The notes below the pieces were generated by a model. It did no database searches. It was not told where the DNA came from and was given only the letters and a program-made list of their open reading frames with translations. Of a stretch of 64,000 bases of DNA, positions 38,462-63,992 are shown in pieces (the stretch's first letter is position 1; each line of letters begins with the position of its first letter). The DNA is taken from contig NW_003314316.1 in assembly GCF_000143415.4 (NCBI RefSeq), positions 322,120-386,119 on the forward strand, written 5' to 3'. The translations under genes and the position numbers were made by a program. This stretch comes from Selaginella moellendorffii. Lineage: Eukaryota > Plantae > Lycopodiophyta.

Positions 38462-39078
38462 TGTGAGACACAAAATCCCTAGGCCCCAAAGTGGAGCCGG
38501 AAGGGCGCCACATGGTAGTGGCCGAAGCGAGAGCCAAACGAGCGTAACACGTTTGGACCAAAAGCTCCGACTTGAAAAGTTAAGAGCGGGAGTGGAACTC
38601 CCAATGAAGTGCTCGAGGAATGAGCACGAAGCGAGCAAAAGGCGAGGCTCCAAAAAGGGACCCAAAAGGACCAACACATGACACGTGGGAGTGTCCGAGA
38701 TGGACTCGAGTTGGAGTCCGAAGTGGAGTCCGAGATGGACCCGAGTTGGAGTCCGAAGTGGAGTCCGAGATGGACCCGAGTTGGAGTCCGAAGTGGAGTC
38801 CGAAGTGGAGTCCGAGGTGGAGTCTGAGATGGAGTCCGAAGTGGAGTCCGAGGTGGACCCGAGATGGACCCGAGTTGGAGTCCGAAGTGGAGTCCAAGAT
38901 GGACCCGAGATGGAGTCCGAGATGGAGTCCGAGGTGGACCCAAGATGGACCCGAAATGGAGTCCGAGATGGAGTCCGAGATGGACCCGAGATGGACCCAA
39001 GATGGAGTCCGAGATGGAGTCCGAGATGGACTTCGAGATGGAGACCGAGATGGAGTCCGAAGTCGAGACCGAGACCGG

Positions 39079-40213: not shown

Positions 40214-42926
40214 GGATGGTAAATTCTATCTCATTCTTGAAATTATCCAGCGATCTTTTGGATGAGCTTAAGGAGTTTATTGACTTCGACTCCTTTATCA
40301 CTGATATTCATGTGAAGGTTTTGTTGAGGGATACCTCTATAAATTTGAAGGGTGACAAGTTTGCGTCATTCGAGATATGAGATAAAATTCTAGTGAAGAA
40401 GGGATATATAGTGGTTCCTCATGTTGACAAATTCATCAAATAATTTTTTGTTGAGTGTCATAATGTGCCAAATGCTAGGCATCCAAGGGTATTGAGAATG
40501 TATATGTTAGTGAAGAAGCATTTTTTTTGGCTTGGGATGAAGTCAGATGTTGAGAAGTATGTACGTGGTTGTTTGACTTGCCAAGTAGTTAAAGTTGATC
40601 ATCAAAAGCTTGTTGTCTTCTATCATCCTCTACATATACTCAAGAATAAATGGGATAGCATCTCAATAGAATTTATCATTGGTTTGCCCAAGAATTTTTT
40701 AGGAAATGATGCTATTTGGGTTGTTGTGAATTGTTTGATGAAGATGACTCACTTCTTCCCAGTGAAGATGATGATAAAAGTTTCTAAACTTGTTCAATTA
40801 TTTGTAGATCGGCTATTCAATCTTTATGGTTTGCCAAGTGACATTTTGATTGGGATCTCAAGTTCATATCCAAGTTTTGGCAAACGGTCTTTAAAAAGTT
40901 AGAGACTAATCTGAGCATGAGTAGTGGTGAGCATCCATAATCAAATGGGCAGATAGGGTGCATGAATTAAATGCTAAAGTCTTTTATGGGAAACTTGACT
41001 AAATAGGGAGTATGGGAGAAGTACTTAGCTTTGCTTCAATTTGCTCATAATAATGCTCATCAATCTAACATGTTTCCTTTTATGGTGATGTATGGCTATG
41101 AGCCTAAGTCTCCCATGAGTTTGAGTTTAGCTTTGATTCGGGTACCTCATGTTTGTGATTTCTTGAAGGATATGCAAAACAAATTTGAGTTAGCAAAGTT
41201 GAACATGAGGCAAACTCAAGATCAAGACAAAAGATTGGCTGATGAGTGTCGTCATCATCAAGAGTACAAAGTTAGTGACAAAGTTTTCCTTAAGCTATCA
41301 AATGCACAATGGTTTTTGAAAAGAGATAGTAGTGCTAAGTTGTTTTCACAGTGTTGTGGGCCTTGAACAATTTTATAGCGCATGGGAGATCTTGCATCAA
41401 CATTTTTTCATTGCCCCAAACTAGAAGTATAAGAAGTTTATCTTTTCCAGGCCATGGATATAGGATATGGAGTGCACTGCAGCAACATCTTGCTTAGAGG
41501 TCCTGTTGGAGCATTAAGGATAAGAAAAAGCTCTATTTCATCATGAAGATCCAGAACTCATGCTTTTGTTTCAACGAATGAGGTGCAATGATAAGGAGAG
41601 CTTTTCTTTCAAAGCCAGTTCAGAGTGTTTGACAACAGCACCTCGCTGTAGATTTCAGTGGAAGTCTGCTCATACTGTAGAGATCGAAAGCCATTCGTAA
41701 CGAAAACAAATATTCACCTTTTGAGTTTCGCCATTGACTTTAAAACTCCCGTCCATGGGAACAACTTTGAAAACATTCCCATTGCCTTTGTAAGCCTCTC
41801 CAAACGTCCCTTCTCCTATCTTCACTATTGTTTTCAGATCACTTAGCACAGATAAAACGAGTTAGTCCGGAAAGAAAATAACCGAAAGTACCCACCAAAA
41901 CTCTGAAAATCCTTGTGAAAGGCTGACAATACTTTCCTGGTCTGACTCGTGTAGCAGGATGTCTATCATCGACATTGTGGGAAGCTCTTGTGGGGAAAAA
42001 TACACAACAACCAAGAAAGACAGGAAAGACTCCCCTAGGGCTTGTATTTCAGCAGTAACTACAAATCACTCATACTGAGTGCGCTGGGCCTGCAGTAACT
42101 CCTCTATGATCACGGCGATGGGATCTTGACGGCCTATAAGAGGTCCCACCATCTTCAAGCAGAGAGAACTCCAGAACCCGAGAGAGAAAACAAGAACTAT
42201 AAAATAACTGAATGGCTGTACCTAATTTCAAACTCCCAAAAACTTAAACACCAACCAATGGCTGAAACTTTCCCAGCTAATAAGTCTTCATCCACAACTC
42301 CGATCGACTTGATTTTACCACCAAAGAATTGCCCTTGATCAGATCTTCAACTTTCTAGAAAACAACTTCTTCAAATTCTCACTTCTGAAATCCGTCATTT
42401 TTTCTCTCTCTAGACGAAATATTCATAGGAAGCTTCTTCAGCGAGCTTCTTCATTTTTCACCTTTTTCTAGCTTAGAAATACGTCAGTACTCACAAAAAC
42501 AACCTCAAGTATGAAAATACAACCGTATATATGGTTGACACCATACCACCCTGATACTCGCGCCGCCCTCGGCACGCTGACTGCCATTAACCACTGACTT
42601 CTTGACTGGTTCAAACCCAACTCTGCTACACTTTCCTCTGACACCGCTCAACTCGACTCCATTTGACTTCTCACACGGCGACACTCCGCCTCTTTCAACT
42701 CTTCTCCTACACTATTGCTGAGCTCGCCTCCACCGACGTCTACAGCCTCCATAAATAAATCCTCCTGGCGCTCCACACCTGAACTCATAAAATCTCCCCC
42801 TTCAGCTGCTCCTCTCAAGGATGTGCAGCTAACTCTACCTGCGTCTTCTACGCTTGTTCTTAAATGAAAACACCAACATACCTCCATTCGATTCTGGAAC
42901 TTCCCATTCAGCTACAACCACAGCTC

Positions 42927-45900
42927 TCAGCTGGCCTCAGCTCTGGTCATCCTCGACTCTGATTCGGATGGCTCCGACACATTGGACTCTGGCTCAGCTC
43001 CGGCTGTTTCATCATTTGAACGTGTATGGTACTTTTTCAATCGGAAACCATTGATCCGCGTTGGCAGCAGGTTTCCACTCAAATCTGCCACCTGCACCGA
43101 GCCATTGTCGTTGACATTCACCACCACGTAAGGGCCCAGCCACCGTATCTTGAGTTTTCCTGGCCGCTTCCAAAACTTGCTGTCATACAGCAACACCAAA
43201 TCCCCTATTGCAAACTTCCGCTCTCGAATATGATCATCATGCCATTTCTTTCTCCGCTTTTGCAATGCCTCTCTAGCTTGAAATGCCAGCAGCCTCGTCT
43301 CATCCAATCGTTCTAGCTCGTTCAACCTCTGCTGTATGGCACCGTCCCAGTCCATAGCATGCTCTACAGCCGTCCTCAAGGCTGGAACTTCAAGCTCCAC
43401 CGGCAATAGTGCTTCCTGCCCATAAACAAACTGAAAAGGTGAGAACCGAGTGGTCACCTTAAAAGCAACTCGATACGCCCAGACTGCATCCAAAAGGCGC
43501 TTATCCCAATCCGTCCGAGAAGCTGAGCAGGTCTTAGTAACAATCCGGCAAAGAGTTCCATTTGTACGCTCCACTTGACCATTGCAACACGGGTAGTAAG
43601 GAGTAGACTTCGAGTGATAAACTCCATAAGTTTCTGTCAGTGCTGCCACTGCCTCGTTCAAGAAGTGTGTACCCCGATCACTCACCAGTTCGAGGGGAAC
43701 TCCAAACCGTGTAATTATCTGCTCATAAAGAAAATCCGCCACCTTCTTACCAGTATCCTCCCGTAGAGCCTTCACCTCAGACCATTTTGTAACGTAATCA
43801 GTGCAGACCAGTACATACTTATAACCTGTCCGTCGAGCTGGAGGAAACGGTCCACAAAAATCAATCCCCCATTTTTCAAACGGCATCACTGGCAATAGTG
43901 GATGAAGAGGTTGGTAGTCACGCTTATCAGGCTTCCCTGCTCGCTGACAAGGGTCACAAGTTTTGACGTAGTACGTAACCTCCTTCCTCAATGTCGGCCA
44001 TCAATATCCAGCTCTGCAAATAATCTCCACCGTCGCTTCTGTTCCAAAGTGGCCTCCATATGCCGAATCATGGCATGCCGCTATCACCTTAGTCGTCTCA
44101 TGTGGTAGCAAACACCGCCTCAGTACGCTATCTCGTCCAATCCGGTATAATACACCACCAACCATCGTATAGAGTCGGCTCTGCAACAGAAGCCGTCGCT
44201 TCTGCCGGTTATTCAACCCTGCCGGATACTCGCCATTGCCAAGGAACTTAACCATCTTGGCATACCAGTCCGGCACTGTTTCAAATTGGAAGATAGGTGC
44301 ATCTGGCAAATCATCCTCTACGCCTACTTCCTCATCACTGTCCTGTGGTGGCAGCCTCGATAAGTGATCTGGCATCTGATGGCTGCTTCCAGGTTTCAAC
44401 ACAATGCGGAACTGAAATTCCTGGAGCAGCAACAGCCAACGTGTGATTCTTCCTGTCTTGCATGGCTTCCCTATTAAATACTTCAGTGCCTGATGATCAA
44501 GGAAAAACACGAACTCCTTGCCAAGTAGATAATGCCGATATTGCTGGATCGCATAGATCATGCCAAGTCCTTCCCTCTCAGTTGCTGAATAGCTCTTCTC
44601 AGCCGTTGAAAGTTGACGGCTGCTGTAACATATTGGATGATCTGCTCGTCCATCTGAGCGTTGACACAGCACCACACCAATGGCCACTGCTGATGCATCC
44701 ACGTGAACGTGAAACTCCAGGTTCCAATCTGGCATCTTCAAAATCGGCGCGTTTACCAGTGCTAGTTTCAAGCGTTGGAAGGCCGCCTCACATACAATTG
44801 TCCACTCATATTTAGCCCCCTTCTTCAGCAGGCTAGTCAAGGGTAGAACTTTCTCAGCAAAGTTCCTCACGAAACGGCGGTGATATCCCACATGCCCAAG
44901 AAATGCCTGCAATTGCTTCACAGTCTCTGGTGACACCAGCTGCATGATCACCTGCGTCTTGGCCGGATCGACAGCTAAACCTTCTCTTGACACTATCCGA
45001 CCCAGCAGCACTCCATGCGTTACCCAGAACTGACACTTGAACGGGTTGAGAGAAATCCCATAGTGCCGACAGCGTTCAAAACACTTCTCGAGAAGGCCTT
45101 CATGCGCCAACTCACTCCCATAGACACTGAAGTCGTCAAGGAATACTTCCATAAACTCTCGCATGTACGGCTGGAAAGCTGCTGTGACAACCCGCTGAAA
45201 GGTAGCAGGTGCATTACACAGGCCGAAGGGCATAACTTTGTAGGCGTAGCAGCCCCACTCAGTCACAAACGTGGTTTTGAGCTGATCCTCTTCTGCTATC
45301 TGCACTTGGTTATAGCCGCTGAATCCGTTGAGGAAGGAATAAAGCTCGTGTCCCGCCACAGCATCAAGTACCGTGTCAGTAAAGGGCAGAGGGAAGCCAT
45401 CCTTCTCAGTCACCTCGTTCAGCTTCCGGTAATCCACACAGACTCGCAGCTGACCATTCTTTTTCGGCACCACCACAATCGGAGACAGCCACTGGCTCAT
45501 TTCCACCTCGTAAATAAACCCAGCTCGCAGCAACTTCTCCAGCTCCTCTCGAACAGTCTTGGAGTAATTCGGGTTCATCCTATACGGCCGCTGCCAAATA
45601 GGCACTGCTCCTGGCTTGAGAATGATCCGGTGCTGAGCCAGCTTCACATCCACACCTCGCATGTCTCTATAAGACCATGCAAACACGTCGAGGTACCTGT
45701 AAAAGAGGCGCCTCAACCTTTCCTTAACTTGGACCGGCAAGTTAGCTCCGACCTTCACCACCTTTTCCTCCTCGGCTGATCCGAGGTTCATCTCTTCGAC
45801 AATTGGCTGAGCTGTGTATCGGCTACTACCTCGTCCTCCAGGCTGGATCGCTGGCTCTTCATCAATCTCTGGAACGGAACCATCTATAACTTCAGAATAA

Positions 45901-47213
45901 AAATGGCGGGGAAACTGCTGCAGTCGTTCCTGCTCCACTACTGGCTCCAAGTCCTCGACCTGAACCATTCGACAGCTCACATCACCACCAAACAACCAAT
46001 GCTTGAGTCGATCACTTGCTGTTCCATCTTCAAAAGGTGACAGCAGCAGGGCATCGTAGCCGGAGCAGGGCTCCACAGCTGCTACCTCCACTGAACTCTC
46101 ATCATTCGACCGACTCTGCTCCGAACACACCTCACTCATACGCTCTCCTGCTTCTGATCCAGTCGTGGTATCACTACTGTCATCGATCCCATCCACTATC
46201 GGCTCACATGCCACTGGAGTCCAGGCCGGCCTCTTCCTCGTCCGAACTTGGATAGTGCGCGACTTGTTTCCATCTCCAATCTTAATAGTCCCCTTCGGCC
46301 AACTCTGATCTGCCCAGGCCTGTAACAACCACGGTCTTCCCAAAAGAATTGGATAATCCAGCTCATGTCCAACCATCCTCAGCACCACGTAATCAACATA
46401 AAAGATAAAACCGGCAATCTCCGTCTTCACCCCAGTAAGTACACCAACCGGTCTCGAGCGAGAATGATTCGCCATGCGGACACGAAAATAAACTGGAGAC
46501 AGCTGCTCCAACCCAAGTTTTGACACCATTTGCTCAGGCATTACGTTGATGGCAGCACCTCCATCAATCACGCACCCCTTCAAGTGCTGACCTGAAATCT
46601 CTACATCTATAATCGGATTCTCTGCTTCGATCATCGGCCATGCTGCATTCACTACCACCTCTCGATGGGCCTTGACTGCTGTGGCCACCACTTTCCTCAG
46701 ACTTGGTGCCAGCTGTAGTAATTGCGCAAATGTGATACTCGGCTTCTGATTCTCTAAGTCCTTGAGCACGTCGTAGGGCTGAGTTTCCAGATTTAGCACT
46801 TGCTTATACCGGCGAGATCTCCGCTGGCCCATCTTCAACGGCTCACCCCCAAAATGTTCCTTGAATACCTCTGCCAGCCGCTGCAGCGTCGAGATGCCCA
46901 CCTTCCTCATAACCTCTTGCGGATCCATTCCACCACTCACCTGGTTCGCATCCGTTTCCTTGCCGTCATTAGGGCACTGAATAGTCCCCGTGATATTCTT
47001 GGCGAGATCTCCGCCATCGGCTATTGGCGCATCCTGAATGCCGCCTCCTTCCAGACCTAAGTCGATCCCCATTTTTTCCTTGTGGTGCTGCTCCTTCCTG
47101 TTTTGGCAAGCTATCATCTCTGGATCCTCCTGAGTATGCGTCCGCTCAATTCTCTGTTCAGCCCTTGTTCTCGGCTCATCTCGGATGTACAACCCGCGGT
47201 CCCTCCGCTGCAA
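42927..47213 (-). pseudogene. Pol (PR-RT-RNase H-integrase) with a nonsense codon at 44001-44003 and a D-to-N change in the first RT catalytic motif
   Basis: IDGGAA protease, RVCVDYR, FLNGFSGYNQ (expected FLDG), FLDD, HVDAS, AGY*WPTL (WW in the paralog at ~59200), WGIDF, SDRG, NGQVE, WLGPY. Confidence 0.92.
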
Positions 47214-48905
47214 CTATGCTCGTGTGTTGACATTCCACACAGGTGTGTCCGCTCTCAACTCTTCAGAATTCACAAAAATGGCTTTAGTATCCACCACCTC
47301 TTTTCCCTTGTCCTGATTTTGACGCTGATTTGGCACTTGCAAGCAGTAGGGGCAATCCTCCTGTCGATGAAGTCCCTGTGTCTGGCATATCCCACAGATT
47401 GGCTGATACTCTTCAGACTTCTGTGCATTCGGACAGTTTGGTGCGATATGTCCAGGTTCCCCACACCGGTAGCACACTATCGGGCCTCGGCCTCGGCCTC
47501 TGCCTCTGCCTCCGAACATTCCCATCCGGCCGCCACCTCGGCCTCCACCGGCAGTCTGCTGCAGCATTGGCCCCGAGTTCTGCACAGCTCCTGGAGCTCC
47601 TACGTTAAAAACCGGGTACGTCTCATACTGCTGGTGCTGAACCTGTTGCTGTGGAAATTGTTGTTGATGGTGAAATTGTGGTTGAACGTAATAGCTTGCG
47701 ACTACAGGTTGCTGCTGGAACTTGGGCGTCACACGAGCTGGATGAAAAAAGCACTTCTCAGGCTTGTGGCCGAACTTCCCACAATACGGACAAGGAGCTT
47801 TTGCTGGTATCAGATTCGGACATTCACTAGGATAGTGGCCATATCCTTGACACTTAATGCACCAGATCTCAGCTCTCTCATGCACCGGCCGAGTTGGAGC
47901 TCCCAAACCTTGAACCAGACTCACTTGGAGTTCTGCCATCTTCTTGGTAAGTGTCTCCACCACATCTTCTTTCACTTTTGTGAGTTGGCTCTCAAATCCG
48001 GTCATGTTTCCTACAGGTAACTGGAGAACTGACGGCTGGACCGGAATCAAAGGTGGAGCTGCTACGGCTCCAAGCACACCAGTCTGGTACTGTGCAATAT
48101 TCGGTGAGAACAAGTTACCATATGTTGCTGGTGGAGCTGCAGCTGCAATATTCCGCGATGACATCCGGGCCTGTTCCCATGTTGCTGCGTGCTCCACTGC
48201 TGCGTTCAAATCTGCCGGTCTTTGCACCTTCACGTGGAACCCGATTTCAAATGGCAACCCATTCAAGAACCAGCGGACTTGGTCGTCAGCGGCAGGCTGT
48301 GGATCTTTCCTCGCGAGCAGCCTCTTGTAGCGAAGAACATAATTTTGCAATGTCTCTCCAGGTAACAATTGAATTGAATTTAGCTCATCACTGATACGCT
48401 GCTTGAATCCCATAGGACGGAAAGCATTGAGAAATGCTGTTTTGAGGTCTGCCCAGGCTGCAAAGGCTGCTGCTGCATTCGCCTGACCATACCATTCTGC
48501 TGCTGCTCCCAGCAATGTTGCCGGAAACAGACGGACTCTCACAGCATCTGCCTGCTCCTGATTTGCTGTGCTGACGTTTTCAAAAGCAGTTACGTGAGCG
48601 TCTGGATCGTCAGTCTGTGTAAACGTTGGATACTTCATCCTCGCATTGGCAGGCTGTGCCATTTGAGGATTTACTGCTTGAGGTGTGGGCGATGTTGGTT
48701 CAAATGGCCCCCACTCCTCCCAATTCAAACTTGAGTCCGAAGTCCTCGGACTAGTTTCAGGGCTGGTTTCAGGCGAATTCTGCAACAGTCTCCTCGCTGC
48801 TCGTTCAGAACGGCCTCGATTCTGCTCTGCCCTTCTAGTAGAAAAATCTAGAAAATTATCCCAGTCCGGGGATCTACCCGCCAGACCGAGAACCAACTGT
48901 GGCAA
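47214..48905 (-). CDS. Gag of the LTR element (retrotransposon gag domain plus four CCHC-type knuckles)
   Basis: DPDAHV..FE, LFPATL.GAA.EWY, then CIKCQGYGHYPSEC, CPYCGKFGHKPEKC, CYRCGEPGHIAPNC, CGICQTQGLHRQEDC. Confidence 0.9.
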   Translation of the reverse strand: MPQLVLGLAGRSPDWDNFLDFSTRRAEQNRGRSERAARRLLQNSPETSPETSPRTSDSSLNWEEWGPFEPTSPTPQAVNPQMAQPANARMKYPTFTQTDDPDAHVTAFENVSTANQEQADAVRVRLFPATLLGAAAEWYGQANAAAAFAAWADLKTAFLNAFRPMGFKQRISDELNSIQLLPGETLQNYVLRYKRLLARKDPQPAADDQVRWFLNGLPFEIGFHVKVQRPADLNAAVEHAATWEQARMSSRNIAAAAPPATYGNLFSPNIAQYQTGVLGAVAAPPLIPVQPSVLQLPVGNMTGFESQLTKVKEDVVETLTKKMAELQVSLVQGLGAPTRPVHERAEIWCIKCQGYGHYPSECPNLIPAKAPCPYCGKFGHKPEKCFFHPARVTPKFQQQPVVASYYVQPQFHHQQQFPQQQVQHQQYETYPVFNVGAPGAVQNSGPMLQQTAGGGRGGGRMGMFGGRGRGRGRGPIVCYRCGEPGHIAPNCPNAQKSEEYQPICGICQTQGLHRQEDCPYCLQVPNQRQNQDKGKEVVDTKAIFVNSEELRADTPVWNVNTRA

Positions 48906-50056
48906 AGATGCTTACTGCAGATGCCCGCAGATGACCGGCCTTTTCCTCAGGCCCGGTTTACTGCGCAGTTACTGCGACTAAGCCCTCCCGGCTAACGCAC
49001 CAAAAAATGTGGGGAAAAATACACAACAACCAAGAAAGACAGGAAAGACTCCCCTAGGGCTTGTATTTCAGCAGTAACTACAAATCACTCATACTGAGTG
49101 CGCTGGGCCTGCAGTAACTCCTCTATGATCACGGCGATGGGATCTTGACGGCCTATAAGAGGTCCCACCATCTTCAAGCAGAGAGAACTCCAGAACCCGA
49201 GAGAGAAAACAAGAACTATAAAATAACTGAATGGCCGTACCTAATTTCAAACTCCCAAAAACTTAAACACCAACCAATGGCTGAAACTTTCCTAGCTAAT
49301 AAGTCTTCATCCACAACTCCGATCGACTTGATTTCACCACCAAAGAATTGCCCTTGATCAGATCTTCAACTTTCTAGAAAACAACTTCTTCAAATTCTCA
49401 CTTCTGAAATCCGTCATTTTTTCTCTCTCTAGACGAAATATTCATAGGAAGCTTCTTCAATGAGCTTCTTCATTTTTCACCTTTTTCTAGCTTAGAAATA
49501 CGTCAGTACTCACAAAAACAACCTCAAGTATGAAAATACGACCATATATATGGTTGACAGCTCTACAACTGGTTTCGAAATGCTTAAGCATTCCAGGTCT
49601 GATATAAGAGTGTCCATGGGCCTTGGTCTCAACACACCACGGACGGGAGGTGTTCTCAAGGCAGCGCTCAAAAGATCCTCTGGACTCACAAAAATCTCCT
49701 CCGGAACAGCTTCCAAATGTCCATCCCTCGCAGGAAGAAAGCACGTACTGCCTTCGAAAATTGATCTCCGAGTAAAAGTTTTGGGAGAAGGACTCTCCTC
49801 CTGGAGCTCGAACGCATCCACTTCGGCAAAATGTGCTTGCTTCTCTCGAACAAAAGTGGCTGGAGGTTTCAAAGGAACCACCCTTCTCTGGGATCCATGA
49901 AAAAACTCAGGAACTCTCAAAACCTGGAAAAACCCAAAGACTTACTTTCATCTGGGCCGAAAAACGTTGCAGCGCACAAGGTATCTTATGGTGCGCAAAA
50001 TCCTTTTGAAAGACCACACTTGTTCGTCTTGAAGAATCCAATCCACGAGTAAAGAT

Positions 50057-50824
50057 CAGTGCTTCAAAACACGCCGTGCACCACGGCGTGTTGGCGTGGT
50101 GACACAAACACGGCCCCCAGCCGTGTTAACACGGGCCGTGTTCATTGACTCGGTCAATGCTCCAAAACACGGCTCCAAACACGGTTGAAACACGGTTGAA
50201 ACACGGTCAAATACCGTGTGACCACGCCGTGTTTTAAAACAATAGCTCACGTGGTTCACGTGAGTGTTTTGCGCTTTGATGTTTTCTTGTCTTGCGATCA
50301 ATCAAAAATTCCTCTCAGATGGATCGTATAACAAAGGGTTCTGTGCAGTGGTGGGAGGACAATGGCTACTCAGGTCCAGATTTGCAGAGGTTGACAATTC
50401 GAGTGCTTAGTTAGGCAAGTTCTTCCTCATCTGTGGAGCGATTATTCAGCATTTTTGGGCACATCACTTCAAAGAAGAGAAATTACTTAGTAGTGAGCCG
50501 GATTGCAGACTTGGTATTTGTGGCCAATAATACCAAGTTGATAGGGAGCCACACTTCCTATGACAAGTTTGTGGGATTGAGCCAGACAGGAAGTATTCCT
50601 CAAATTACTAATGTTGATATTGAAGCTATGGAAGAAGAGGATGAAGATGAAAATGATGATCCTGCTAATGAGGAGCTTCTAGATGAGACGGAGTGATAAG
50701 TAGAATATTCTAGAGAATATTCGTGTTTTCACCCGTGTTTATCCGTGTTCATTTCCATGTTCCATGTTCGTGTTCAAAAAATTGAATGCCATGTTCGTGT
50801 TCGTGTTCGTGTTTTGAAGCTATG
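50057..50824 (+). mobile_element. Non-autonomous hAT DNA transposon (768 bp) with 17-bp TIRs and 8-bp TSD GTAAAGAT
   Basis: TIRs CAGTGCTTCAAAACACG / CGTGTTTTGAAGCTATG. TSD at 50049-50056 and 50825-50832. Subterminal ACACGG/CGTGTT repeats. hAT dimerisation remnant WW...L..L.IRVLS*ASSSSSVERLFS. Confidence 0.93.
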
Positions 50825-51286
50825 GTAAAGATAAAAGAAGAACACCGGAAAATCTCACCTGGAAGAAAGACAGCGATCGATCCAGCTCTTGGTATGCGTT
50901 GTCGTCCTCTTCCCCTCATCGGCGGCACCTCCATCCCTGGCCTTGCCCCGCCGCTTAAAAACAGCAGCTGGCTTCTTCCTCTCCACTCCCACGAAATCCC
51001 CATCTGGCCGATGGATCAAGATCACAAGAACACTAGCAGCGGGGAAAAGAACACACCTGGGAACAGTGCCTCTTCCGCCATGTCCAAGCTCTGAGGGCTC
51101 AAGCATTTCGAATTTTGGGCGGGAAAGGGTTTAGGGCATACATGTGGACAGAAAATGGCATAAAAAGTATCGGGAAGTGGGCTGTTTTCTAGGTGACAAT
51201 AAGAGGGTCTTGGGACGATGTTTCTCTAGAACTTTGGTCGTGTTCCCTGGGCTATTCCCCTCTAGAATTTGGGAAATCGTTCATTC

Positions 51287-52397
51287 ATGGCTCTTCCAAA
51301 TTTCAATTTGCTATTGCTGATTATCAATGAGAATTTGTTGATCATATTTGCTAGTAAGTCCTCACCTGTGTTTTCCTTTTGATTAAATCTATGCATTGCA
51401 GCTTTTAGTGCTGCGTGCTTGAAAGACTACACCAAAGCAGGAGTTTTAGCTTCTCTGTTCTTGCTTGGAAACTGGATCATAGCTTGGTCTGAGGGGAATA
51501 ACAAAGATCACGTAAGAATTCCCAATCTCTTCATTTGATTTTACATACTCTTGTCCAACAGATCAACATCTCCAATGATCTAGAATCCGCATCATTTGTG
51601 AAAACCACAAGCTCGTCTCGTAAGATAGAATCTCATAACAACAAATCTGGGGAGACAGTCACAACAATGGTCATAGACTTCTTTGCAAAATATCATACCC
51701 CAGGTTAGAAAACATTCTAAGAAACATTCTAAGATCACTAAATCATTGATATTAAAAAACATCACTATTGTTTGTGCGTGCCTGTGCAGCCATGATCTTA
51801 GCTACAGCACTGGTCCCTCTGGTGCTGGACACGAGCAATCGAAAACACTGGCTTTACTTGTCGCTCGTCGTAAGCCCATGCGCTCTTGTGATCTCTAGCA
51901 CAGTCACAACCACTGTCGCAAAAGCCCGAGCTGCGCAATTGGGTCTTGTGATCCAGGGCGGTGCTGGCTGCCTCACGGCTCTTGCAAGGCTCAAGATCCA
52001 GAAGGAGAAACTCCGGGAGGTATTGAGCAACAATGGCGAGATCACTGTGACATGCGAGGATGGCGATGGCAGCAGCGAGCATGCGCGGCCAAGTCTCGAG
52101 CCCAACGAAGTTGCCATGCTCACATCGGCAGCTTGGATTGGGAGAGAGTATGTTGCGGCAGTCTCCTCTTGCAATCTCTTCTTGCTCGTCACAAAGATGC
52201 TCGTCACGGGGTTTGTCGTCGCTGGCTACATTCCAGCGCTTGGGGCAGTGGCCCTCATTGCAGATCTTGGAGCTTGCACGGCGGTGGCTTTGAGAGGATT
52301 TGTCACACTCTTGTTGGTCGAGGAGAAGGGAGCTTCTCGACGAGATCTGGAAGAGCGGAAACAAGGTGAATGGGATTTGAGGACTCCGTTGCTTTAG
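51287..52397 (+). CDS. Truncated P1B-2 (HMA2/3/4-like) ATPase derivative keeping only the transmembrane core; 4 exons (51287-51353, 51402-51511, 51562-51703, 51790-52397), 308 aa
   Basis: GT-AG splicing gives one 927-nt open frame. INENLLIIFA, DY..AG...LF....W, IDFFAKYHTPA, KHWLYLSLVVSPCALVISS, AAQLGLVIQGG..L..LARLKI, VTKM, ADLGACT. No TGE, DKTGT, HP or GDGxND motifs. Confidence 0.72.
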
Positions 52398-52516
52398 AAT
52401 TCTCCAAGTGTTTGCCTTCAAATTGAAACCAAAAGTGTGCCATATGGTGATGCTACAGTTAAGAATAGAGCGTATATGCTGTATACATGTGTTTACAAAA
52501 TGACAATACTTAGTTT

Positions 52517-52535
52517 GTATGTATGTATGTATGTA

Positions 52536-52578
<43 letters not shown>
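52517..52578. repeat. Compound microsatellite (GTAT)n(AT)n
   Basis: Directly visible. Confidence 0.95.
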
Positions 52579-52582
<4 letters not shown>

Positions 52583-53052
52583 TCTTATAAACTGAAAATA
52601 AGTTTTAGATTTTTCTAGTCATTAATATAAGACAGCCAAAAGATCATGAATTGCAATCTCAGAAGTTCTTACCACAATTAATATACATATTCTCATATCA
52701 TACAATTATATTTATACATTTAATTTTTATTTCACTTAGCAATAATGTATGGTTTACTTTGAATTTTACCAATTTATAATATAAAATTTAAATAACAAAA
52801 GGCAATATATTCACATAGGTTTCAACTTGACTTGGAGACTGAGGTCTCTTAACTATAAAATAGAAGCTTTTATATTTTACAGAATATATGAAGTTATTCT
52901 TAAATAACTAGATAATAAATAAATAATAATAAAGTTTGTCAGCTGAGAAATCTCCTTTCCATGCTTCTATAGGGAAAAAAATATTTCAAGCCAAAGAGTG
53001 AAGAATGTTGTATATCTGCACAAAACATAGTATATCCACTATGTTTGCTTAC

Positions 53053-53405: not shown

Positions 53406-55263
53406 TTATTTTCGAAGCAGGCCATTGATAGAGTTAACACTGAGGAAGCCAGCCTTAAGTTTGCCGCTGGTCATCCTCAAGTCGTCAATTATATAGCTCC
53501 AAGTCAAACCCAACACTCCCACAAAGAAATCACACTCGGCTGCCATGACCAAGTTTATAAAGGCCGTGTTGAACGCTTGCTTGTCTCCAAGCAACGCCAT
53601 ATACTCCGCCATCCTGATCGTTCCAACTTGCCTTGGAACATCACTGTAATAAAACTTCCAGCCTTTGTACTCCTTGGATTCATCCACGACGTTCTAAACC
53701 ATGCAAAAGCTTTGTGATTTCAAATCTTTGTCAATGGCTTTCTTACCTGCATTTCTGTGGAAAGCCACACACTTCTTACGTGTGGGAATCTCTTCCGGAG
53801 GACATTAGCGAGCTTCATGTATTCGTCAAAAGAGACTACTCTCATCTCGCTGGCTTTGTCACCCTGTCTCACATGAATGCTTAACAGAGGCCGCGGCATC
53901 CAAGGTCCATAGTCACTCCACACATGTTCTTCCATGGGATTACTGGAATTACGCTTACTCTCATTTCTTGTATGCGGCCATTCAGTGCCAAGGGTTTTAA
54001 GCACCAGTTTTGCAACTTCTTCCCCAAAGGCTCTATGTCGTTCTTTGTTTAAAAGATTGCACAGATACTCACTTGGAAATCGTGTGAGATAGCGAAGTGC
54101 CTGTATACGTTAATTCTAGATCATTAGCCTACCATTTGATGAATGAGAAACTTGCCTGAGCTCTCCACCACCTTCGATGATTTGTGTGGTAATTTGTCAT
54201 GAGCTTGTCTTTTACCCCCACAGTTGGTCGCATTGCTTTCCAAGGCTCTCCCCAAAAACTAAAAACCAGATAATACTAAGTTACTGTATGAAAAAAACTC
54301 TTTTTTCTCACCTTGGTATCTCACCATTCCATTGATCGCCACTAAACTCTTTGATAATTCCCTCGTCCCAGGCCTGTTTTTGCTCAGCAAGCCGCAATGC
54401 CCTTTCCATGCACTCCTCAGAAGCCTCGGGAACAAAGTAGCACGACCAGCGAGCGTGGTTGGATCCTAGCATTATTTTAACACTTTGAAAACATCAGCCC
54501 GAGATAGTCGATAAAAGAGTTTTGAAACCTGTGCATCCTTTGTGCCTGGCACCGTGGTAATCCTTGGTAATGAAAACCCGGCCTTGTATTAGCGCAGCTC
54601 CAAGCATTCCGGCCATTGACACCATGTCAGATCCAACTCCTACCGAGTCGCGCGTCTCGTCGTGGTGCCAAAGTGCGAGAAGAAATCTCGCATCGGTACA
54701 GTTTTTCGGGTGTTGGTGCAACCAAATATCACGCTGGACGCGTCGCGTTAACGGGATATTATCGTCATCACCGCTAATGACCTGTCCAAGAGCAGCAAAA
54801 GGCTACTGAGAAAACCAAGAAAACGAGAAAGATTACCCGATCTAAGAAGAACCTACCTATAAGAGAACTTACCCATGCTGATGCTTGTCTCTGAATTCAT
54901 GTCAAGCTCCTCTTTTTGCTGGTAAAATCCCTTCCAGGATGGATCGTTCCTGCGATCAAACTCTGCAGTCTCCTGGCTGCATCGCTTGCAATCCTGGATG
55001 TGCGGTGCATTGATCGTCACCTCGGGAGGCGTTGCACCGCTCACTCTCGACTACAGATCGCTGCTCCACAGATCGACCAGGAGTTTTACTCTGCTCGACG
55101 CAGCCGAGGTCGAGGAATTAATTGATCTTGGTGCGGGTGTTGGTGTTACACTAGCCTCTTGGCGATCCTGTTTCATCCAGTTCATTCTGAAACTAATCAA
55201 ACAACCAAGTTCAAGGACAAGATCCAAAACAGGAGCCATTTCAGGGAATCCTTCTCCTTTCAT
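53406..55263 (-). pseudogene. GT23/FUT8-like locus, copy C; in-frame TAG at 55051-55053 and apparent frameshifts in the 5' part
   Basis: APHIQDCKRC, VQRDIWLHQHP.NC, GVGSDMVSM, RWWRAQALRY, SIHVRQGDKASEM, WLSTEMQ, FVGVLGLTWS. Confidence 0.78.
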
Positions 55264-55601
55264 CCTTTTGAGAAATTAGACGAGCACCTAATAGAGATCA
55301 TGATCCTATAGTACAGTTGACTAATGCGACCATGATGGAGATTTTTTTGTGGAAGTAAATTCACGAACGTGCTGAACACTAGATTTCTCGTTTCAGCAAC
55401 AAAACAACAGTAAAGAAGAATAGCTGTCTGATTATACCAAGTGCGTGCGCCACATGTAACGTAAAATACTCATTTTTACAGTCTGTACCAAAATCGAATC
55501 TAGCAAAGAGAAGGGCCGTCCGATCTCCTCCATCCAAGGGTACAGACTAGAAAGCTTAAGATGAGTTTGAATGTCAGTCGAGCTTACCTTACTCCAAAAC
55601 T

Positions 55602-57885
55602 ATGTTTGGGAGCAATGGACTGAGGAAGATTTTTGGGATTGGGGTTACAGCTCTTGTGCTTTTATTCATAATAATCGCTAACATTTTGTGGAGTAAGAGT
55701 AGTGTTGATTCTTTCTGGCATGTTGGCCCTTCAAAGTCTTTGGTGAAATGGGATGATCACAACAGCACAGGAGTTTTCATATGGCCAGTCCCCCAAAAAC
55801 GTCTCCAAGGGATCGATTTCCATGAGACTGTGCACAAAGTTTGCCATAACTCCTCCCAGAACTTTAAAAGTCTTGCAAGCAGGGATTGATCGCTACACGG
55901 TATTGATTCTCAAGCAGAGAAAGCTAAGGATTCCAGCGAAAAAGAATCCACCAGATTTTGTTTTGGACGAACTTCGTATCGAGCTCAAGTCATTCAACCA
56001 AAGCGTGAGAGAGACAAAAATTTTAACTTATTTTTCTAGGGAGCTCTATCTTGGTGTAGATGAATCGTATCGCCTCCAAGTCCCCGACCCTTCAAATTCA
56101 AGGGTAGTATTAGCAAAATCTTTGAAGTTGAGCGCTGGTTCACCTCCTTTCTAGCGGCAAGAACTGTCTATGGGGCCCTACGAGGACTCGAGGTAGGCTT
56201 GAAAACAAAAGTTTTGGATTTGCTAAACTATTTGCATTTTTTATAGACTTTTAGCCAGATTTGCACTTACAATGCTGTCGAAAGAGCTGTGCTTTTGCAA
56301 GGCTGCCCATGGAACATTTTTGACGAGCCTAGATTTTCATATCGAGGCCTTTTGATTGGTGAGAACTTTTTTTCTTTAGAACAGACAACGGCCTCTAATT
56401 AATTTTCACTCGCTTACCAGATACTGCTCGACACTACTTGCCATTAAAGACGATAGAGAATGTGATCGACTCCATGGCCTACGCGAAGCTTGTGAGTTCC
56501 AATTTCTCTATCCCTTATATATGAGCCGAGCCCCTTTCTAACTTCTTTGCCTCCAGGATGTCTTGCACTGGCATGTTGTCGACGAGGAGTCCTTCCCTTT
56601 GGAGATTCCATCGTTTCGAAAGGCTCCTACTCTATCTCTCAGCGCTACAACCTCGATGATGCAAAAGCTATAGTCAAGTAAGCTATACTTTGAAAGAGAG
56701 TGCAAATGTCCATGCTTTTATTCTTATACAGGTATGCTCGATTGCGAGGTATACATGTCATGCCAGAGATTGATGTCCCAGGCCACGCTCGCTCATGGTA
56801 AACTTCTTCTGCCTCCATTGTAAATTAATAGATTTACTTGCGTGTAGGGGAGTTGGATATCCTGAGCTATGGCCCTCTGAAAACTGCAAAACACCTCTGG
56901 ACATCAGTAAGAATTTCACTTTTGAGGTGATAGATGGCATATTTTCCGGTATGAACATGTTTTATATTGAATCAAAATCCTTGTGTCAACTCTATGCTGC
57001 CTAGATCTCTCAAAGGTGTTTCCATTCGAGCTCCTTCATATAGGAGGAGATGAAGTTAACACTAGTAAGCAGCAAATTTTCTTGGTGATTGTCAGCTTAT
57101 TTTCTGCTAAACAGGATGCTGGGAAATCACAGAACCTGTAAATGACTGGTACGTTAGATTCGGTTTTACGAAACATCCAACTGTCTGAAGCAGGCTGAGA
57201 AAGCACAATTTAACACCTTCACAGGGCTATGAGTTTTTTGTGCTTCAAGTGCAAAAACTGGCCTTGAAACATGGATACGTTCCTGTCAACTGGTAAGGAG
57301 ATTAGCCATGTCGGATTCCATTAAGTTTTGCTCTCTCTAGGCAAGAACCATTTGAAAAATTTGGACCAAGTTTGTCAAGGAAAACAATTGTTCACAACTG
57401 GTAACTTATCAAAAGGGGTTGTCTCTCTAACTCAGATTGTTCAAATGGCTATTCAGGTGGGGCACTCAAATTCCTCCCAACACTGTCAGCTCGGGCCTCA
57501 AGAGTATAGTTAGCGAGCAATTTTCATGGTCACATTGATATACCATGGGAGGAGTTTTATTCAAAGGAACCATATGATAACATTGCCAGCCACAAAGAAC
57601 AGCAGTTGATTATTGGAGGTGAGGTTTGTATGTGGGGTGAGAAAGTTGATGCAGCCAATATCCAACAAAGAATATGGCCAAGGGCAGCAGCGGCGGCAGG
57701 CAAGCTAGCTTCACTGTATTTGCTTTCTTGGCTAACAATTTTTATTTTGGCCAGAGGGGCTTTGGAGCCCATCTAATGTCACAGGTTTGGGTCCCAAAAA
57801 TGCTGCTCCTAGGCCTGAATTTTTCAGAAGCCTGCTGAATGAAAGAGGAATAGCTGCTTCTCCAGTGAAATCAAAAGAAGGCTGA
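55602..57885 (+). pseudogene. Beta-N-acetylhexosaminidase (GH20), copy B, with frameshift and deletions
   Basis: TM anchor, IWPVP (frameshift ~55795), [34 protein letters not shown]. Deletions near 56615 (PELW) and 57530 (WYLDH). Confidence 0.82.
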
Positions 57886-57940: not shown

Positions 57941-60310
57941 TGAGGACAGGGTATGCTCATAGTGGCTTGACGTTCTCTTGCTTCTCGTCGTAAGTCGCTC
58001 ATTCACACGATCGAGGGCGCTTCGCCGAGGACCTCTTCGTTGAGGCATCTTTTTTCCTTTATTCTCTTCTCCTCACATATAATTGATCTCCTGTTTTTTC
58101 CCCCTTAAGTGTCCCCAATGGTCGTGACCCTAATACTGAAGTGGCGGCAAATGGAATATTCCCTCAGTTCTACCCCCACCTATTGGCCCGGAGCACACAG
58201 CTCCACGGCAGCTTCATCTCGCTCATGGTACTTGCGCAGGCGAGCTCCATTAACACGAGTAGGTAACAAGTTCCCACTAAGATCTTCAAGCTGAACCGAG
58301 CCATTGGTAAAAACTTCAACGATGCGATATGGGCCAAGCCAGCGAATACGGAGTTTCCCAGGCTTTTTCCAGTGCTTGCTATCGTAAAGGAGAACCTGAT
58401 CACCAGCAGAAAAATTTTTAGCATGCAAATGACGATCGTACCAGACTTTGCGGCGCTTCTGAAGTGCTTCGCGAGCTTGGAAAGCGAGAAGTCGACGCTC
58501 GTCGAGTTGGAGAAGTGTGTCCAGTCGAGCTTGAAGAGTGTTGTCCCAGTCCAAGTTGTGCTCGACAGCCATACGGAGAGATGGAATCTCAAGCTCGAGT
58601 GGTAGGATGGCTTCTTGTCCATAAACAAGCTGGAACGGTGAAGCTTTGGTGGTGACCTTGTAAGCAACGCAGTATGCCCAGAGAGCATCCAACAAGCGTT
58701 GATCCCAATCTGTGCGAGAAGCACTGGCAAGCTTCGTGATAATGTCGCACAGTATCTTATTGGTGCGCTCCACCTGTCCGTTAGCACGAGGGTGATAGGG
58801 AGTGGACTTACGATGAGCGATGCCATACTTCTCCACCAAGGTCGCGATCACTTGATTGATAAAGTGAGTACCTCTATCGCTCACCAGCTCCAAAGGGCAG
58901 CCAAATCTCGTGATGATGTTCTTGTAAAGAAAAGTCGCAACCTTGGCAGCTGTGTCTTCCGTGAGAGCTTCTGCCTCGGCCCACTTCATGACATAGTCCG
59001 TGCACACGAGAATGTAGCGGCAACGGGAAGGATGGCTGGCTGGCTTGATCGGTCCCACAAAATCGATGCCCCACTTCTCAAAAGGAAGCACCGGAAGTAG
59101 AGGATTAAGCGGCATCAGATCACGACGAGTTGGGCGACCAGCACGCTGGCAGGGATCGCAGGTCCAAACGTAGGCAGCAACATCCTTGTGAAGCGTTGGC
59201 CACCAGTAGCCTGCTTGGAGAACCAACCGAATTGTTCCTTGTGAGGAGAAGTGGCCGCCATAAGGTGAGTCATGGCATGATGCTATGACTGTCTCCACCT
59301 CATGAGGAAGGATACAACGGCGTAGAACATCGTCACGGCCAAGGATGTAGAGCTGGCCATGCAGGAGAGAGTATGGACGAGCCTGGATAATAAGTCGCTT
59401 GCGTGCGGTGACCGTAAAGTCAGCAGGGAACTCGCCGGTAGCCAGATAATCTGCAATCCCTTGATACCATTCGGGAACAGCGTCGACCGCAAAGAGATCC
59501 GTGGTGTCGCAAGAAAACAGAGTTGCATCAGCTGGGTCATCCTCAAGGTCCTGGGAGGAGGGAGGGCCTGGCAATCGTGAAAGGTGATCGGCCATGGCAT
59601 GAGCGCGGCCGGGTTTCAGGATCACCTCAAAGTCAAATTCCTGGAGGATGATGAGCCAGCGAGATATGCGACCTGTGCTGCAAGGCTTGTTGACGAGGTA
59701 CTTGAGGGCTTGGTGATCCACGAAAAATTTGAAGTGTGTGCCCAACAGGTAGTGGCGATACTTCTGCAAAGATCATGCCTAAGCCTTCCCGTTCAGTGGC
59801 AGAGTAGTTGCGCTCGGCAGAGGAGAGTTGGCGGCTTGCGTAGAAAATAGGGTGATCGATGCCCTCTCGCAGCTGGCAAAGAACAGCGCCGACAGCAAAG
59901 GCAGAAGCATCCACGTGGACGTGGAAAATAACTGTCCAGTCAGGAACGGCTAAAATCGGAGCAGTGATCAGAGCTCCCCAGAGAAGCTCAAATGCGTCCT
60001 GACACGCTGGTGTCCACTCATAAGGCACGCCGGCCTTCAAGAGTTTCGTCAGAGGCAAAGCTTTAGTTGCGAAATCGTAGATAAAGCAGCGATGGTAGCC
60101 GACATGGCCCAAGAAAGCTTGAAGATCTTTTTTAACGCGCGGTGGTTCCAGGTTCTTCACGATAGCCACCTTAGCTGGATCCACAGCTAATCCTTCCCAG
60201 GAGACCACTCGACCGAGAAGAATGCCACGGGGAATGCCAAACGAACACTTGGAGGGATTTAGAGAAATGCCATAGAAACAGCAACGTTCAAAACATTTTT
60301 CGAGTTTTAT
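57941..60310 (-). mobile_element. Truncated gypsy element related to the 42-49 kb element: RT end, RNase H, integrase, PPT and a 226-bp 3' LTR (57941-58166)
   Basis: ORFs 59633-60208 and 58180-59769 closely parallel the 42927-47213 pol. LTR TGAGG...CCTCA. PPT-like GGTGGGGGTAGAAC at 58167-58180. Frameshift near 59767. Confidence 0.9.
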
Positions 60311-63810: not shown

Positions 63811-63992
63811 TGTAAGCAACCAAAGGGAACGACTCGAGAGACGATCCATGGGGTTCAAATATAGAGGGAAAGGGCCCATGAATAAGAGTGCACCCCCTTT
63901 TTCAATCGGTTAAGGGTTTTGGGATACTTGGGGTTAAGCGTCCTTGGGTTTGAATAGTACTGGGTTGGGTGACCTCCTGGGAAGTCCAAACT
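63811..63992 (+). mobile_element. LTR-like unit beginning TGTAAGC with a 5S rRNA-derived internal control region (63933-63987), copy 2; may continue past the window edge
   Basis: GTTAAGCGTCCTTGGGTTTGAATAGTACTGGGTTGGGTGACCTCCTGGGAAGTCC matches the 5S rRNA box A-IE-box C region. About 93% identical to 5568-5749. Confidence 0.85.

What the first reader, a model, noticed from the sequence alone, without database searches (positions are those of the whole stretch)
51287..52397. 'Pump-dead' HMA: a spliceable gene encoding only the membrane core of a Zn/Cd P1B-2 ATPase
Seen: four exons with canonical GT-AG sites give an uninterrupted 308-aa frame with about six hydrophobic helices. The actuator domain is replaced by a ~40-aa linker and the P/N domains by a ~60-aa linker; the DKTGT position reads EKLRE. 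Known: P1B-2 pumps use CPC in M4, Lys in M5 and Asp (ADxG) in M6 for metal transport. Seen: SPC, TKM and ADLGAC are retained. Inference: large frame-preserving deletions and heavy divergence without stops, in a neighbourhood full of pseudogenes, suggest selection for an ATP-independent metal channel, sensor or dominant regulator. It sits head-to-head with the Haspin copy (~180 bp).
Basis: partly seen in the sequence, partly recalled or inferred. Interest (0 to 1): 0.75.

Follow-up and report, generated by a model that had tools for sequence, protein, structure and literature searches.

The report
Motor-less zinc-pump core gene, Selaginella
This spikemoss gene encodes only the six membrane helices of the plant's own zinc/cadmium pump, with every ATP-driven part deleted; its reading frame has stayed open through far more change than chance allows, so it probably has a non-pumping job that nobody has tested.

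Summary
Four exons with GT-AG borders (51287-51353, 51402-51511, 51562-51703, 51790-52397) add up to 927 nt, or 308 aa plus stop. The product equals the deposited Selaginella moellendorffii model SELMODRAFT_422158.

It descends from a P1B-2 Zn/Cd pump. In a tree it is sister, with 100% support, to the plant's own 1035-aa pump XP_024531832. It keeps helices M1-M6 in order. It has lost the N-terminal metal-binding domain, helices MA/MB, the A domain, the P/N domains and the Cys-rich tail. DKTGT reads EKLRE and CPC reads SPC. The M5 Lys and M6 Asp are kept.

It is not a lone relic. Three paralogues (95, 93 and 58% identity) share the same deletions. Neutral decay fits poorly:
- Exon 4 differs from the parent by 4-9 indels, all in frame.
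- At the observed divergence, both copies stay open in about 1% of neutral simulations.
- Membrane segments are more conserved than linkers (65% vs 46%).

The metal channel, sensor or regulator idea remains inference.

The scan found this family before on other DNA (s1-408307, s1-420028). No paper found names these genes.

The parts
51287..51353 (+). Exon 1 (ATG, residues 1-22 plus the first base of codon 23); start of helix M1
51354..51401 (+). Intron 1, 48 nt, GT..AG; read through, it gives an in-frame TGA
   Evidence: read directly
51402..51511 (+). Exon 2 (residues 23-59): end of M1, the M1-M2 loop with the DYTKAG motif, and M2
51512..51561 (+). Intron 2, 50 nt, GT..AG
51562..51703 (+). 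Exon 3 (residues 60-106): remnant of the A domain and the stalk before M3
   Evidence: tblastn of parent P0005 residues 437-486
51646..51657 (+). S-G-E-T, aligned to the parent's TGES dephosphorylation loop (degenerate remnant)
   Evidence: alignment
51672..51673 (+). Site of a 36-nt (12-codon) in-frame deletion specific to this copy; the other three paralogues keep the 12 residues
   Evidence: alignment; one search shows no intron here
51704..51789 (+). Intron 3, 86 nt, GT..AG
51790..52397 (+). Exon 4 (residues 107-308 plus TAG): M3, M4, the P/N remnant linker, M5, M6 and a short tail, all in one uninterrupted frame
51873..51881 (+). SPC in M4 (the pump's CPC; first Cys changed to Ser in all four family members; 4 residues deleted just before it)
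52005..52019 (+). E-K-L-R-E at the DKTGT columns; the phosphorylation site is destroyed
52194..52196 (+). Lys242 in M5 (invariant in 54 pumps and in the 4 minis)
52263..52265 (+). Asp265 in M6 (the ADxG motif; invariant in pumps and minis)
50040..50830 (.). Upstream transposon remnant (AAACACGG-type subterminal repeats and an ORF at 50433-50696 that looks like a hAT dimerisation domain); context only, not part of the gene
   Evidence: Pfam gave no hit

Best explanation
The region is one intact member of a small Selaginella-specific family of protein-coding genes. A duplicate of the plant's own P1B-2 Zn/Cd pump lost everything that uses ATP and kept only membrane helices M1-M6.

Shown here:
- Descent from the pump.
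- Loss of the N-terminal metal-binding domain, MA/MB, the A and P/N domains, DKTGT and TGES.
- Retention of the intramembrane SPC, Lys and Asp residues.
- A frame kept open, with only in-frame indels, through very large divergence.

It follows that the protein cannot be a pump.

Inferred, not shown: the six-helix bundle inserts in a membrane and still holds a divalent-metal site. With no gating domains, I think it most likely lets Zn/Cd bind or leak passively. Less likely, it acts as a partner or decoy of full-length pumps. Truncated SERCA1 proteins, which cannot pump but increase ER calcium leak, are the precedent.
For: Gene model: it equals deposited protein P0001.

Homology:
- NCBIfam ATPase-IB2_Cd, E 1.4e-6.
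- ZntA structure 4umv, E 1.2e-7 with the family profile.
- Best full-length hit among 1.84 billion representatives is Selaginella XP_024531832, E 3e-31, matched in three stretches in the same order.
- tblastn of that pump on the window hits M3-M4 (58.6% over 70 aa, E 5e-18) and M5-M6 (33% over 97 aa, E 4e-7), both in the frame of exon 4. No other pump piece is found anywhere in the 64 kb.

Tree: the minis form one clade (100% support) and are sister to that pump (100%). The stem is 1.62 substitutions per site, against 0.35 for the pump.

Selection on the frame:
- 4-9 indels relative to the parent inside the single exon 4, all multiples of three.
- At 58% identity between P0001 and P0004, neutral simulation leaves both copies open in about 1% of runs and this lineage alone in about 9%.
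- Mismatches are milder than neutral (BLOSUM62 -0.27 vs -0.66 +/- 0.17).
- Membrane segments are 62-70% identical, linkers 50%, the tail 22%.
- 40 of 70 pump-conserved positions are kept, including P136, C137, K242, D265 and G267.

SPC is itself the native motif of a solved working P1B-4 pump, 7qbz (alignment).

Fold: the AlphaFold model (pLDDT 72.9, pTM 0.69) aligns best to ZntA 4umv (Z 12.6, 242 residues, rmsd 4.7 A).

Precedent: truncated SERCA1 proteins (PMC2192035).
Against: - No paper or held supplement names the four genes.
- P0001 carries only the 2011 GenBank accession EFJ16011.1 and its UniRef entry. It has no RefSeq XP accession, unlike the full-length pumps.
- No relatives outside S. 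moellendorffii were found.
- The stem branch is extremely fast. Several pump-invariant membrane residues have changed: E34K, E49I, C135S, P144T, N234C, W257L and N275R.
- Among the three youngest copies, changes fall on membrane segments and linkers in proportion to their lengths. This fits recent relaxation.
- This copy alone has a 12-codon deletion, and P0003 lacks 20 residues at the start of M5.
- The paralogue models may have been drawn to avoid defects; I could not see their DNA.
- The structural model used pump sequences in its alignment, so its fold match is partly circular.
Confidence: 0.55

Rival explanations
1. It is a decaying relic. A once-useful or never-useful truncated pump copy was duplicated a few times. 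This copy is now an unexpressed or functionless pseudogene whose frame is still open only because the last duplications are recent.
For: - Transposon-rich surroundings with a broken neighbouring gene.
- No RefSeq protein with this sequence.
- A very long stem branch.
- Loss of pump-invariant membrane residues.
- Recent copies (93-95% identity) show no membrane-versus-linker contrast.
- A copy-specific 12-codon deletion here and a 20-residue gap in P0003.
- This lineage alone stays open in about 9% of neutral runs for exon 4, which is not decisive.
Against: - 36% identity to the parent, with all six helices still in frame, is far beyond what a neutral frame survives.
- The P0001-P0004 pair is open in both copies in only about 1% of neutral runs for exon 4, before frameshifts are counted.
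- All 4-9 indels inside exon 4 are in frame.
- Mismatches are more conservative than neutral, and the older divergence is concentrated in the linkers.
- The splice sites are all intact.
Confidence: 0.3
2. It is a gene fragment picked up and spread by a transposon (Pack-MULE, Helitron or hAT type), which would explain several copies with identical truncations.
For: - Four copies at three or more loci.
- A transposon remnant ends about 460 bp upstream.
- The region is transposon-rich.
Against: - No terminal inverted or direct repeats bracket the gene.
- No second copy and no shared flank exists in the 64-kb window.
- The truncation consists of many small in-frame deletions rather than one captured block.
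- The introns are kept.
- Copies are as far apart as 58% identity yet stay in frame.
Confidence: 0.07
3. The coding frame is irrelevant. The locus acts only as RNA, for example as a regulator of the parent pump gene.
For: None directly; it is only the general possibility for diverged gene copies.
Against: - Protein identity to the parent is only 36-42%, too diverged for sequence-based RNA silencing.
- Conservation follows protein features: frame, membrane helices and charged site residues.
Confidence: 0.03

Closest known systems
Selaginella moellendorffii P1B-2 pump XP_024531832 ('putative inactive cadmium/zinc-transporting ATPase HMA3', 1035 aa; alleles SELMODRAFT_60724/60690, the latter listed as SmHMA2 in PMC3355532)
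   Same: Closest relative and sister in the tree. M1-M6 are in the same order; M3-M4 is 58.6% identical. It shares PCALVIS, the M5 Lys and the M6 ADxG motif.
   Different: The mini lacks about 730 residues: the N-terminal extension with the metal-binding domain, MA/MB, most of the A domain, the P/N domains and the Cys-rich tail. CPC reads SPC, and DKTGT and TGES are gone.
ZntA of Shigella sonnei (PDB 4umv/4umw), the structural reference for P1B-2 pumps
   Same: Best sequence hit among solved structures (E 1.2e-7) and best structural match (Z 12.6, 242 residues). The counterparts of C394, K693 and D714 are kept. That residue numbering is from my own knowledge of the ZntA structure paper and was not checked here.
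   Different: It has six helices, not eight. The counterpart of C392 is Ser. The acidic M2 residues at the cytoplasmic entry are Asn and Ile. There are no soluble domains.
Other members of the same Selaginella family: SELMODRAFT_425782, 425783 (a tandem pair) and 417746
   Same: The same deletions, the same SPC, Lys and Asp residues, and 95, 93 and 58% identity.
   Different: This copy has its own 12-codon deletion before M3 and about eight private substitutions. It has no tandem partner in the window.
Truncated SERCA1 proteins S1T (PMC2192035)
   Same: They are P-type ATPase derivatives that cannot pump yet act in the membrane, lowering ER calcium. They show how a motor-less pump piece can have an effect.
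   Different: S1T are splice variants of a working pump gene and are cut at the C-terminus. They are not separate genes, and they do not keep the full M1-M6 core.
Chlamydomonas CrHMA3/CTP3 (504 aa), flagged as a 'possible fragment or pseudogene' lacking the DKTGT region (PMC3355532, Table 2 footnote)
   Same: It is a plant-lineage P1B protein model without the phosphorylation domain.
   Different: It belongs to the P1B-1 (copper) group, is a single copy and was never analysed. Nothing shows that it is maintained.
P1B-4 pumps with a native SPC motif (for example PDB 7qbz)
   Same: SPC in M4 aligns with the mini's SPC, so a Ser in place of the first Cys is compatible with metal binding.
   Different: They are full pumps with A, P and N domains, and the tree does not make them the ancestor.

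Membership tests
Working P1B-2 (Zn/Cd/Pb) P-type ATPase | DKTGT with the phosphorylated Asp | tested here: not met
   The columns read E-K-L-R-E, and are deleted or changed in P0004.
Working P1B-2 (Zn/Cd/Pb) P-type ATPase | A domain with TGES | tested here: not met
   Only a linker of about 35 residues with an S-G-E-T remnant is left. Pfam E1-E2_ATPase scores below threshold (15.9 bits against a cut-off of 28.1).
Working P1B-2 (Zn/Cd/Pb) P-type ATPase | P and N domains (nucleotide binding, GDGxNDxP hinge) | tested here: not met
   About 200 residues are deleted. No Pfam hydrolase hit was found. tblastn of the parent finds no such piece in the window.
Working P1B-2 (Zn/Cd/Pb) P-type ATPase | CPC(x)6P in M4 | tested here: not met
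   It reads SPC, and the downstream Pro is Thr, in all four minis.
Working P1B-2 (Zn/Cd/Pb) P-type ATPase | Lys in M5 and Asp (DxG) in M6 | tested here: met
   K242, D265 and G267 are invariant in 54 pumps and in the 4 minis.
Working P1B-2 (Zn/Cd/Pb) P-type ATPase | Eight helices (MA, MB, M1-M6) and an N-terminal metal-binding domain | tested here: not met
   The protein starts at M1. 294 parent residues are missing at the N-terminus. No remnant lies upstream.
P1B-2 lineage (descent, not function) | Significant homology in the same order, and placement inside the plant P1B-2 clade | tested here: met
Selaginella motor-less pump-core family (SELMODRAFT_425782/425783/417746) | Same domain deletions, same SPC/Lys/Asp residues, high identity over the full length | tested here: met
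   The minis form one clade with 100% support.
Classical pseudogene | Stops, frameshifts or broken splice sites | tested here: not met
   There are none in this copy. All indels relative to the parent are in frame.
Classical pseudogene | Neutral substitution pattern (dN/dS near 1) | not testable with these tools
   Paralogue DNA could not be reached. Protein-level proxies argue against long-term neutrality but are silent on the most recent branch.
Transposon-captured gene fragment | Terminal repeats or shared transposon flanks around the fragment | tested here: not met
   No bracketing repeats were found. The flanks have no other copy in the window. The other loci were not seen.

The most novel reading that the evidence does not exclude
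A P-type ATPase has been turned by evolution into a stand-alone six-helix membrane protein, kept by selection, that handles Zn/Cd without ATP. It would act as a passive channel or facilitator, a membrane metal sensor, or a regulator of full-length pumps. That would be a new functional class derived from the pump's membrane core.
Probability: 0.3. Interest if true: 0.8.

Novelty: new variant of a known kind. Interest (0 to 1): 0.55.

Why it matters
P-type ATPases are understood as machines in which the membrane ion path is opened and closed by the cytoplasmic domains. A natural protein that keeps the path and its charged site but has none of those domains, and is kept by selection, would be a natural experiment. 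It would show what the membrane core does on its own: leak, bind or regulate. It would also be a new kind of metal-homeostasis component in an early vascular plant. If it proves to be only a slowly dying relic, it is still a useful caution, because the four annotated 'uncharacterized proteins' would then be pump remnants.

Tried and rejected
- Pfam on the separate exons gave nothing. On the whole protein it gave only a sub-threshold E1-E2_ATPase hit.
- Foldseek against the PDB gave only weak rows (best 4umv, E 0.23). The second-look aligner was needed.
This ruled out paralogue DNA, dN/dS, a check of intron positions or flanks at the other loci, and any transcript contigs.
- Literature searches for the four locus tags, the UniProt and GenBank accessions and 'Smo' identifiers found nothing. 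The Selaginella expression-atlas preprint's held supplements do not contain the gene numbers.
- A sequence look-up in the scan's own notes was blank.
- I considered using the absence of Logan-derived members in the protein clusters as evidence against expression and rejected it. The clusters of the full-length Selaginella pumps have no Logan members either, so that source evidently does not cover this species.
- Pfam on the neighbouring minus-strand ORFs did not confirm Haspin or hAT domains.
Exons were searched one by one by reference. Whole-protein work used the database protein P0001, which a tool returned and which equals the spliced model.

Full report
**What is there.** The window is Selaginella moellendorffii. 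The exon-4 translation is 100% identical to SELMODRAFT_422158 (P0001, 308 aa; GenBank EFJ16011.1).

- The exons are 51287-51353, 51402-51511, 51562-51703 and 51790-52397, giving 67+110+142+608 = 927 nt.
- The three introns are 48, 50 and 86 nt long, and each runs GT..AG.
- The four exon translations sit at residues 1-22, 24-59, 60-106 and 108-308 of P0001. The two split codons supply T23 and A107.

For whole-protein work I used P0001, which a tool returned and which equals the spliced model.

**What it descends from.**

- Family scans are weak because the protein is so diverged. The separate exons give no Pfam hit, and the whole protein gives only a sub-threshold E1-E2_ATPase hit.
- NCBIfam recognises the first 68 residues of exon 4 as the cadmium-type P1B-2 family (TIGR01512, E 1.4e-6; ZntA models, E about 1e-6).
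- Among solved structures the only real hits are ZntA 4umv/4umw (E 7e-4 with exon 4 alone, 1.2e-7 with the family profile) and the P1B-4 pump 7qbz.
- A profile search of 1.84 billion representatives returned the family's own cluster and then only full-length heavy-metal pumps. The best is the plant's own XP_024531832 (1035 aa, E 3e-31, three stretches in the same order). Fern pumps (E 2.5e-24) and the second Selaginella P1B-2 pump (E 3.8e-21) follow.
- tblastn of XP_024531832 on the window hits M3-M4 (58.6% over 70 aa, E 5e-18), the stalk in exon 3, and M5-M6 (33% over 97 aa, E 4e-7). No other piece of the pump is found anywhere in the 64 kb.
- In a maximum-likelihood tree on the 308 shared columns (58 sequences), the four truncated proteins form one clade (100% support). 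That clade is sister to XP_024531832 (100%) inside the land-plant P1B-2 group. Its stem is 1.62 substitutions per site, against 0.35 for the pump. Long-branch effects could inflate the stem length. The sister position with the same species' pump agrees with the E-value ranking.

**What was lost and kept.**

Lost:
- 294 N-terminal residues: the extension, the metal-binding domain and helices MA and MB.
- Most of the A domain. A remnant of about 35 residues still shows S-G-E-T where the pump has TGES.
- About 200 residues of the P and N domains.
- About 135 residues of the Cys-rich tail.

Kept, in order, are M1 to M6. The DKTGT columns read E-K-L-R-E. CPC reads SPC, with four residues deleted just before it, and the Pro six residues downstream is Thr.

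Of 70 positions conserved in at least 85% of 54 pumps, 40 are kept. They include P136, C137, A138, S142, K242 (M5), D265 and G267 (M6). The changed positions include the catalytic motifs and several membrane or entry residues: E34K, E49I, C135S, P144T, N234C, W257L and N275R.

SPC is the native motif of the solved P1B-4 pump 7qbz and aligns with it here. The Ser therefore need not abolish metal binding.

An AlphaFold model built with pump sequences in the alignment (pLDDT 72.9, pTM 0.69) has six long helices, with M4 broken at SPC and disordered linkers at 67-96 and 194-205. Its best structural match is ZntA 4umv (Z 12.6, 242 residues, rmsd 4.7 A), followed by other P-type ATPases. Foldseek alone was weak. 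Because the alignment contained pumps, this match is partly circular.

**It is a family.** Three more S. moellendorffii proteins share exactly these deletions:
- SELMODRAFT_425782 (321 aa, 95% identity).
- SELMODRAFT_425783 (300 aa, 93%; on the same scaffold as 425782).
- SELMODRAFT_417746 (322 aa, 58%).

The window holds only one copy. This copy has a private 36-nt in-frame deletion between 51672 and 51673. P0003 lacks 20 residues at the start of M5.

The scan had already met this family on other DNA (notes s1-408307 and s1-420028). Those notes also say it is transcribed and kept by selection. I could not see their evidence and did not rely on it.

No relative with these truncations was found in any other eukaryote. 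Few lycophyte proteomes are in the databases, so this absence is weak evidence.

**Relic or maintained gene?** Arguments for long-term maintenance of the frame:

1. Inside the single, intron-free exon 4, M4 and M6 are both significantly homologous to the parent in the same frame. Between and around them the alignment needs up to nine indels. At least four are unavoidable: before SPC, the large P/N deletion, the two-residue insertion in the M5-M6 loop, and the tail. All are multiples of three. Under neutrality each would have about a one-in-three chance of being in frame.
2. I mutated exon 4 neutrally in two lineages until amino-acid identity fell to the observed 58% between P0001 and P0004. 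Both copies stayed free of stops in about 1% of runs, and this lineage alone in about 9%. Frameshifts were not counted, and only two thirds of the gene was used.
3. The observed replacements are milder than neutral ones (mean BLOSUM62 -0.27 against -0.66 +/- 0.17).
4. Between P0001 and P0004 the membrane segments are 62-70% identical, the linkers 50% and the tail 22%. Overall this is 117/179 against 54/118.
5. Identity to the parent is only 36% (42% in exon 4). Parent and fern pump are 54% identical on the same columns. A frame cannot survive that much change by chance.

Arguments for caution:
- The paralogue gene models could hide defects.
- Among the three youngest copies, differences fall on membrane segments and linkers roughly in proportion to their lengths (9:6 and 10:10). 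This fits recent relaxation or simply too few changes.
- The protein carries no RefSeq accession, unlike the full pumps.
- No paper or held supplement names the genes.
- The lack of Logan-derived cluster members says nothing, because the full-length Selaginella pumps lack them too.

**Surroundings.**
- A young LTR retrotransposon lies at 41989-49307, with 300-nt LTRs that are 99% identical.
- It splits a minus-strand gene. That gene's 5' ORF starts at 51106, 180 bp from the mini-pump ATG. Its Haspin-like glycine-loop ORF lies at 41670-41849. Pfam did not confirm the family.
- A small transposon remnant with AAACACGG-type subterminal repeats and a hAT-like ORF occupies about 50040-50830.
- Downstream, 53416-57851 is an old inverted duplicate of 29192-36655.
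- No repeats bracket the mini-pump gene, so capture by a transposon is not supported here.

**How it most likely works.**

Shown: the protein has no phosphorylation site, no nucleotide-binding or actuator domain and no cytoplasmic metal-binding domains. It cannot pump.

Shown: it keeps the six core helices with the Pro-Cys of M4, the M5 Lys and the M6 Asp. From my own knowledge of the ZntA structure, not checked here, these are the pump's intramembrane metal site and built-in counter-ion.

Inferred: it is a membrane protein that still binds a divalent metal inside the bilayer. Because nothing gates it, I favour passive binding or leak of Zn/Cd. A role as partner or decoy of the full pumps is second. 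Truncated SERCA1 proteins are a documented case of pump fragments that cannot pump yet lower ER calcium (PMC2192035).

An alternative reading of the conserved Lys-Asp pair is that it is simply a buried salt bridge needed for folding. The loss of the acidic entry residues in M2 shows that the cytoplasmic entry path is no longer the pump's.

**Comparison and novelty.** The protein works like no described family. By descent it belongs to the P1B-2 lineage but fails nearly every defining test of a P1B-2 pump.

The survey of plant P-type ATPases (PMC3355532) lists three P1B-2 pumps for Selaginella and does not mention these genes. It notes one Chlamydomonas copper-pump model without DKTGT as a 'possible fragment or pseudogene'.

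I rate it a new variant of a known kind. The descent, the truncation and the family are solid, long-term selection on the frame is likely, and function is unknown.

**Verdict.**
- 0.55: an intact member of a maintained, non-pumping protein family.
- 0.30: a copy now decaying.
- The remainder: transposon capture or an RNA-only role.

Noticed in passing
window 41989-49307: An LTR retrotransposon with 300-nt LTRs that are 99% identical (41989-42288 and 49008-49307) and long minus-strand ORFs (42927-48905). It looks like a young insertion that splits the minus-strand gene next to the mini-pump.
   Followed up: partly
window 41670-41849 (-) and 50855-51106 (-): A Haspin-like kinase glycine-loop ORF and, 7 kb of transposon later, the putative 5' ORF that faces the mini-pump gene at 180 bp. 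Pfam gave no hit on the 5' ORF, so the Haspin call rests on reading by eye.
   Followed up: partly
window 50040-50830: A small transposon remnant with repeated AAACACGG-type subterminal motifs, an inverted pair at 50159-50183 / 50796-50820, and an ORF (50433-50696) that looks like a hAT dimerisation domain. Pfam did not confirm it.
   Followed up: partly
window 29192-36655 and 53416-57851: An old inverted segmental duplication (nine arm pairs, 71-84% complementary). The right arm starts about 1 kb after the mini-pump stop and holds broken minus-strand ORFs.
   Followed up: no
window 38660-39041: A tandem array of GAGTCCGAGATGGA-like units (11-, 24- and 35-nt spacings) that is open in several frames on both strands.
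   Followed up: no
window 52505-52590: A (TGTA)n/(TA)n microsatellite about 110 bp after the stop codon.
   Followed up: no
window 58180-59769 (-): A 529-aa ORF with the look of a Ty3/gypsy RNase H-integrase-chromodomain region. It is one more retrotransposon in the neighbourhood.
   Followed up: no
proteins P0082 (395 aa) and P0073 (270 aa): Metagenome (ENA/JGI) proteins that look like bacterial P1B pumps with the P/N domains cut out in frame; in P0082 most of the A domain is cut out too. Both keep CPC, the M5 Lys, the M6 Asp and DKTG. P0082's cluster has three members on three contigs. Motor-less pump cores may therefore arise repeatedly.
   Followed up: partly
window 5568-5749 and 63811-63992: A 182-nt direct repeat, 93% identical, at the two ends of the window.
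   Followed up: no
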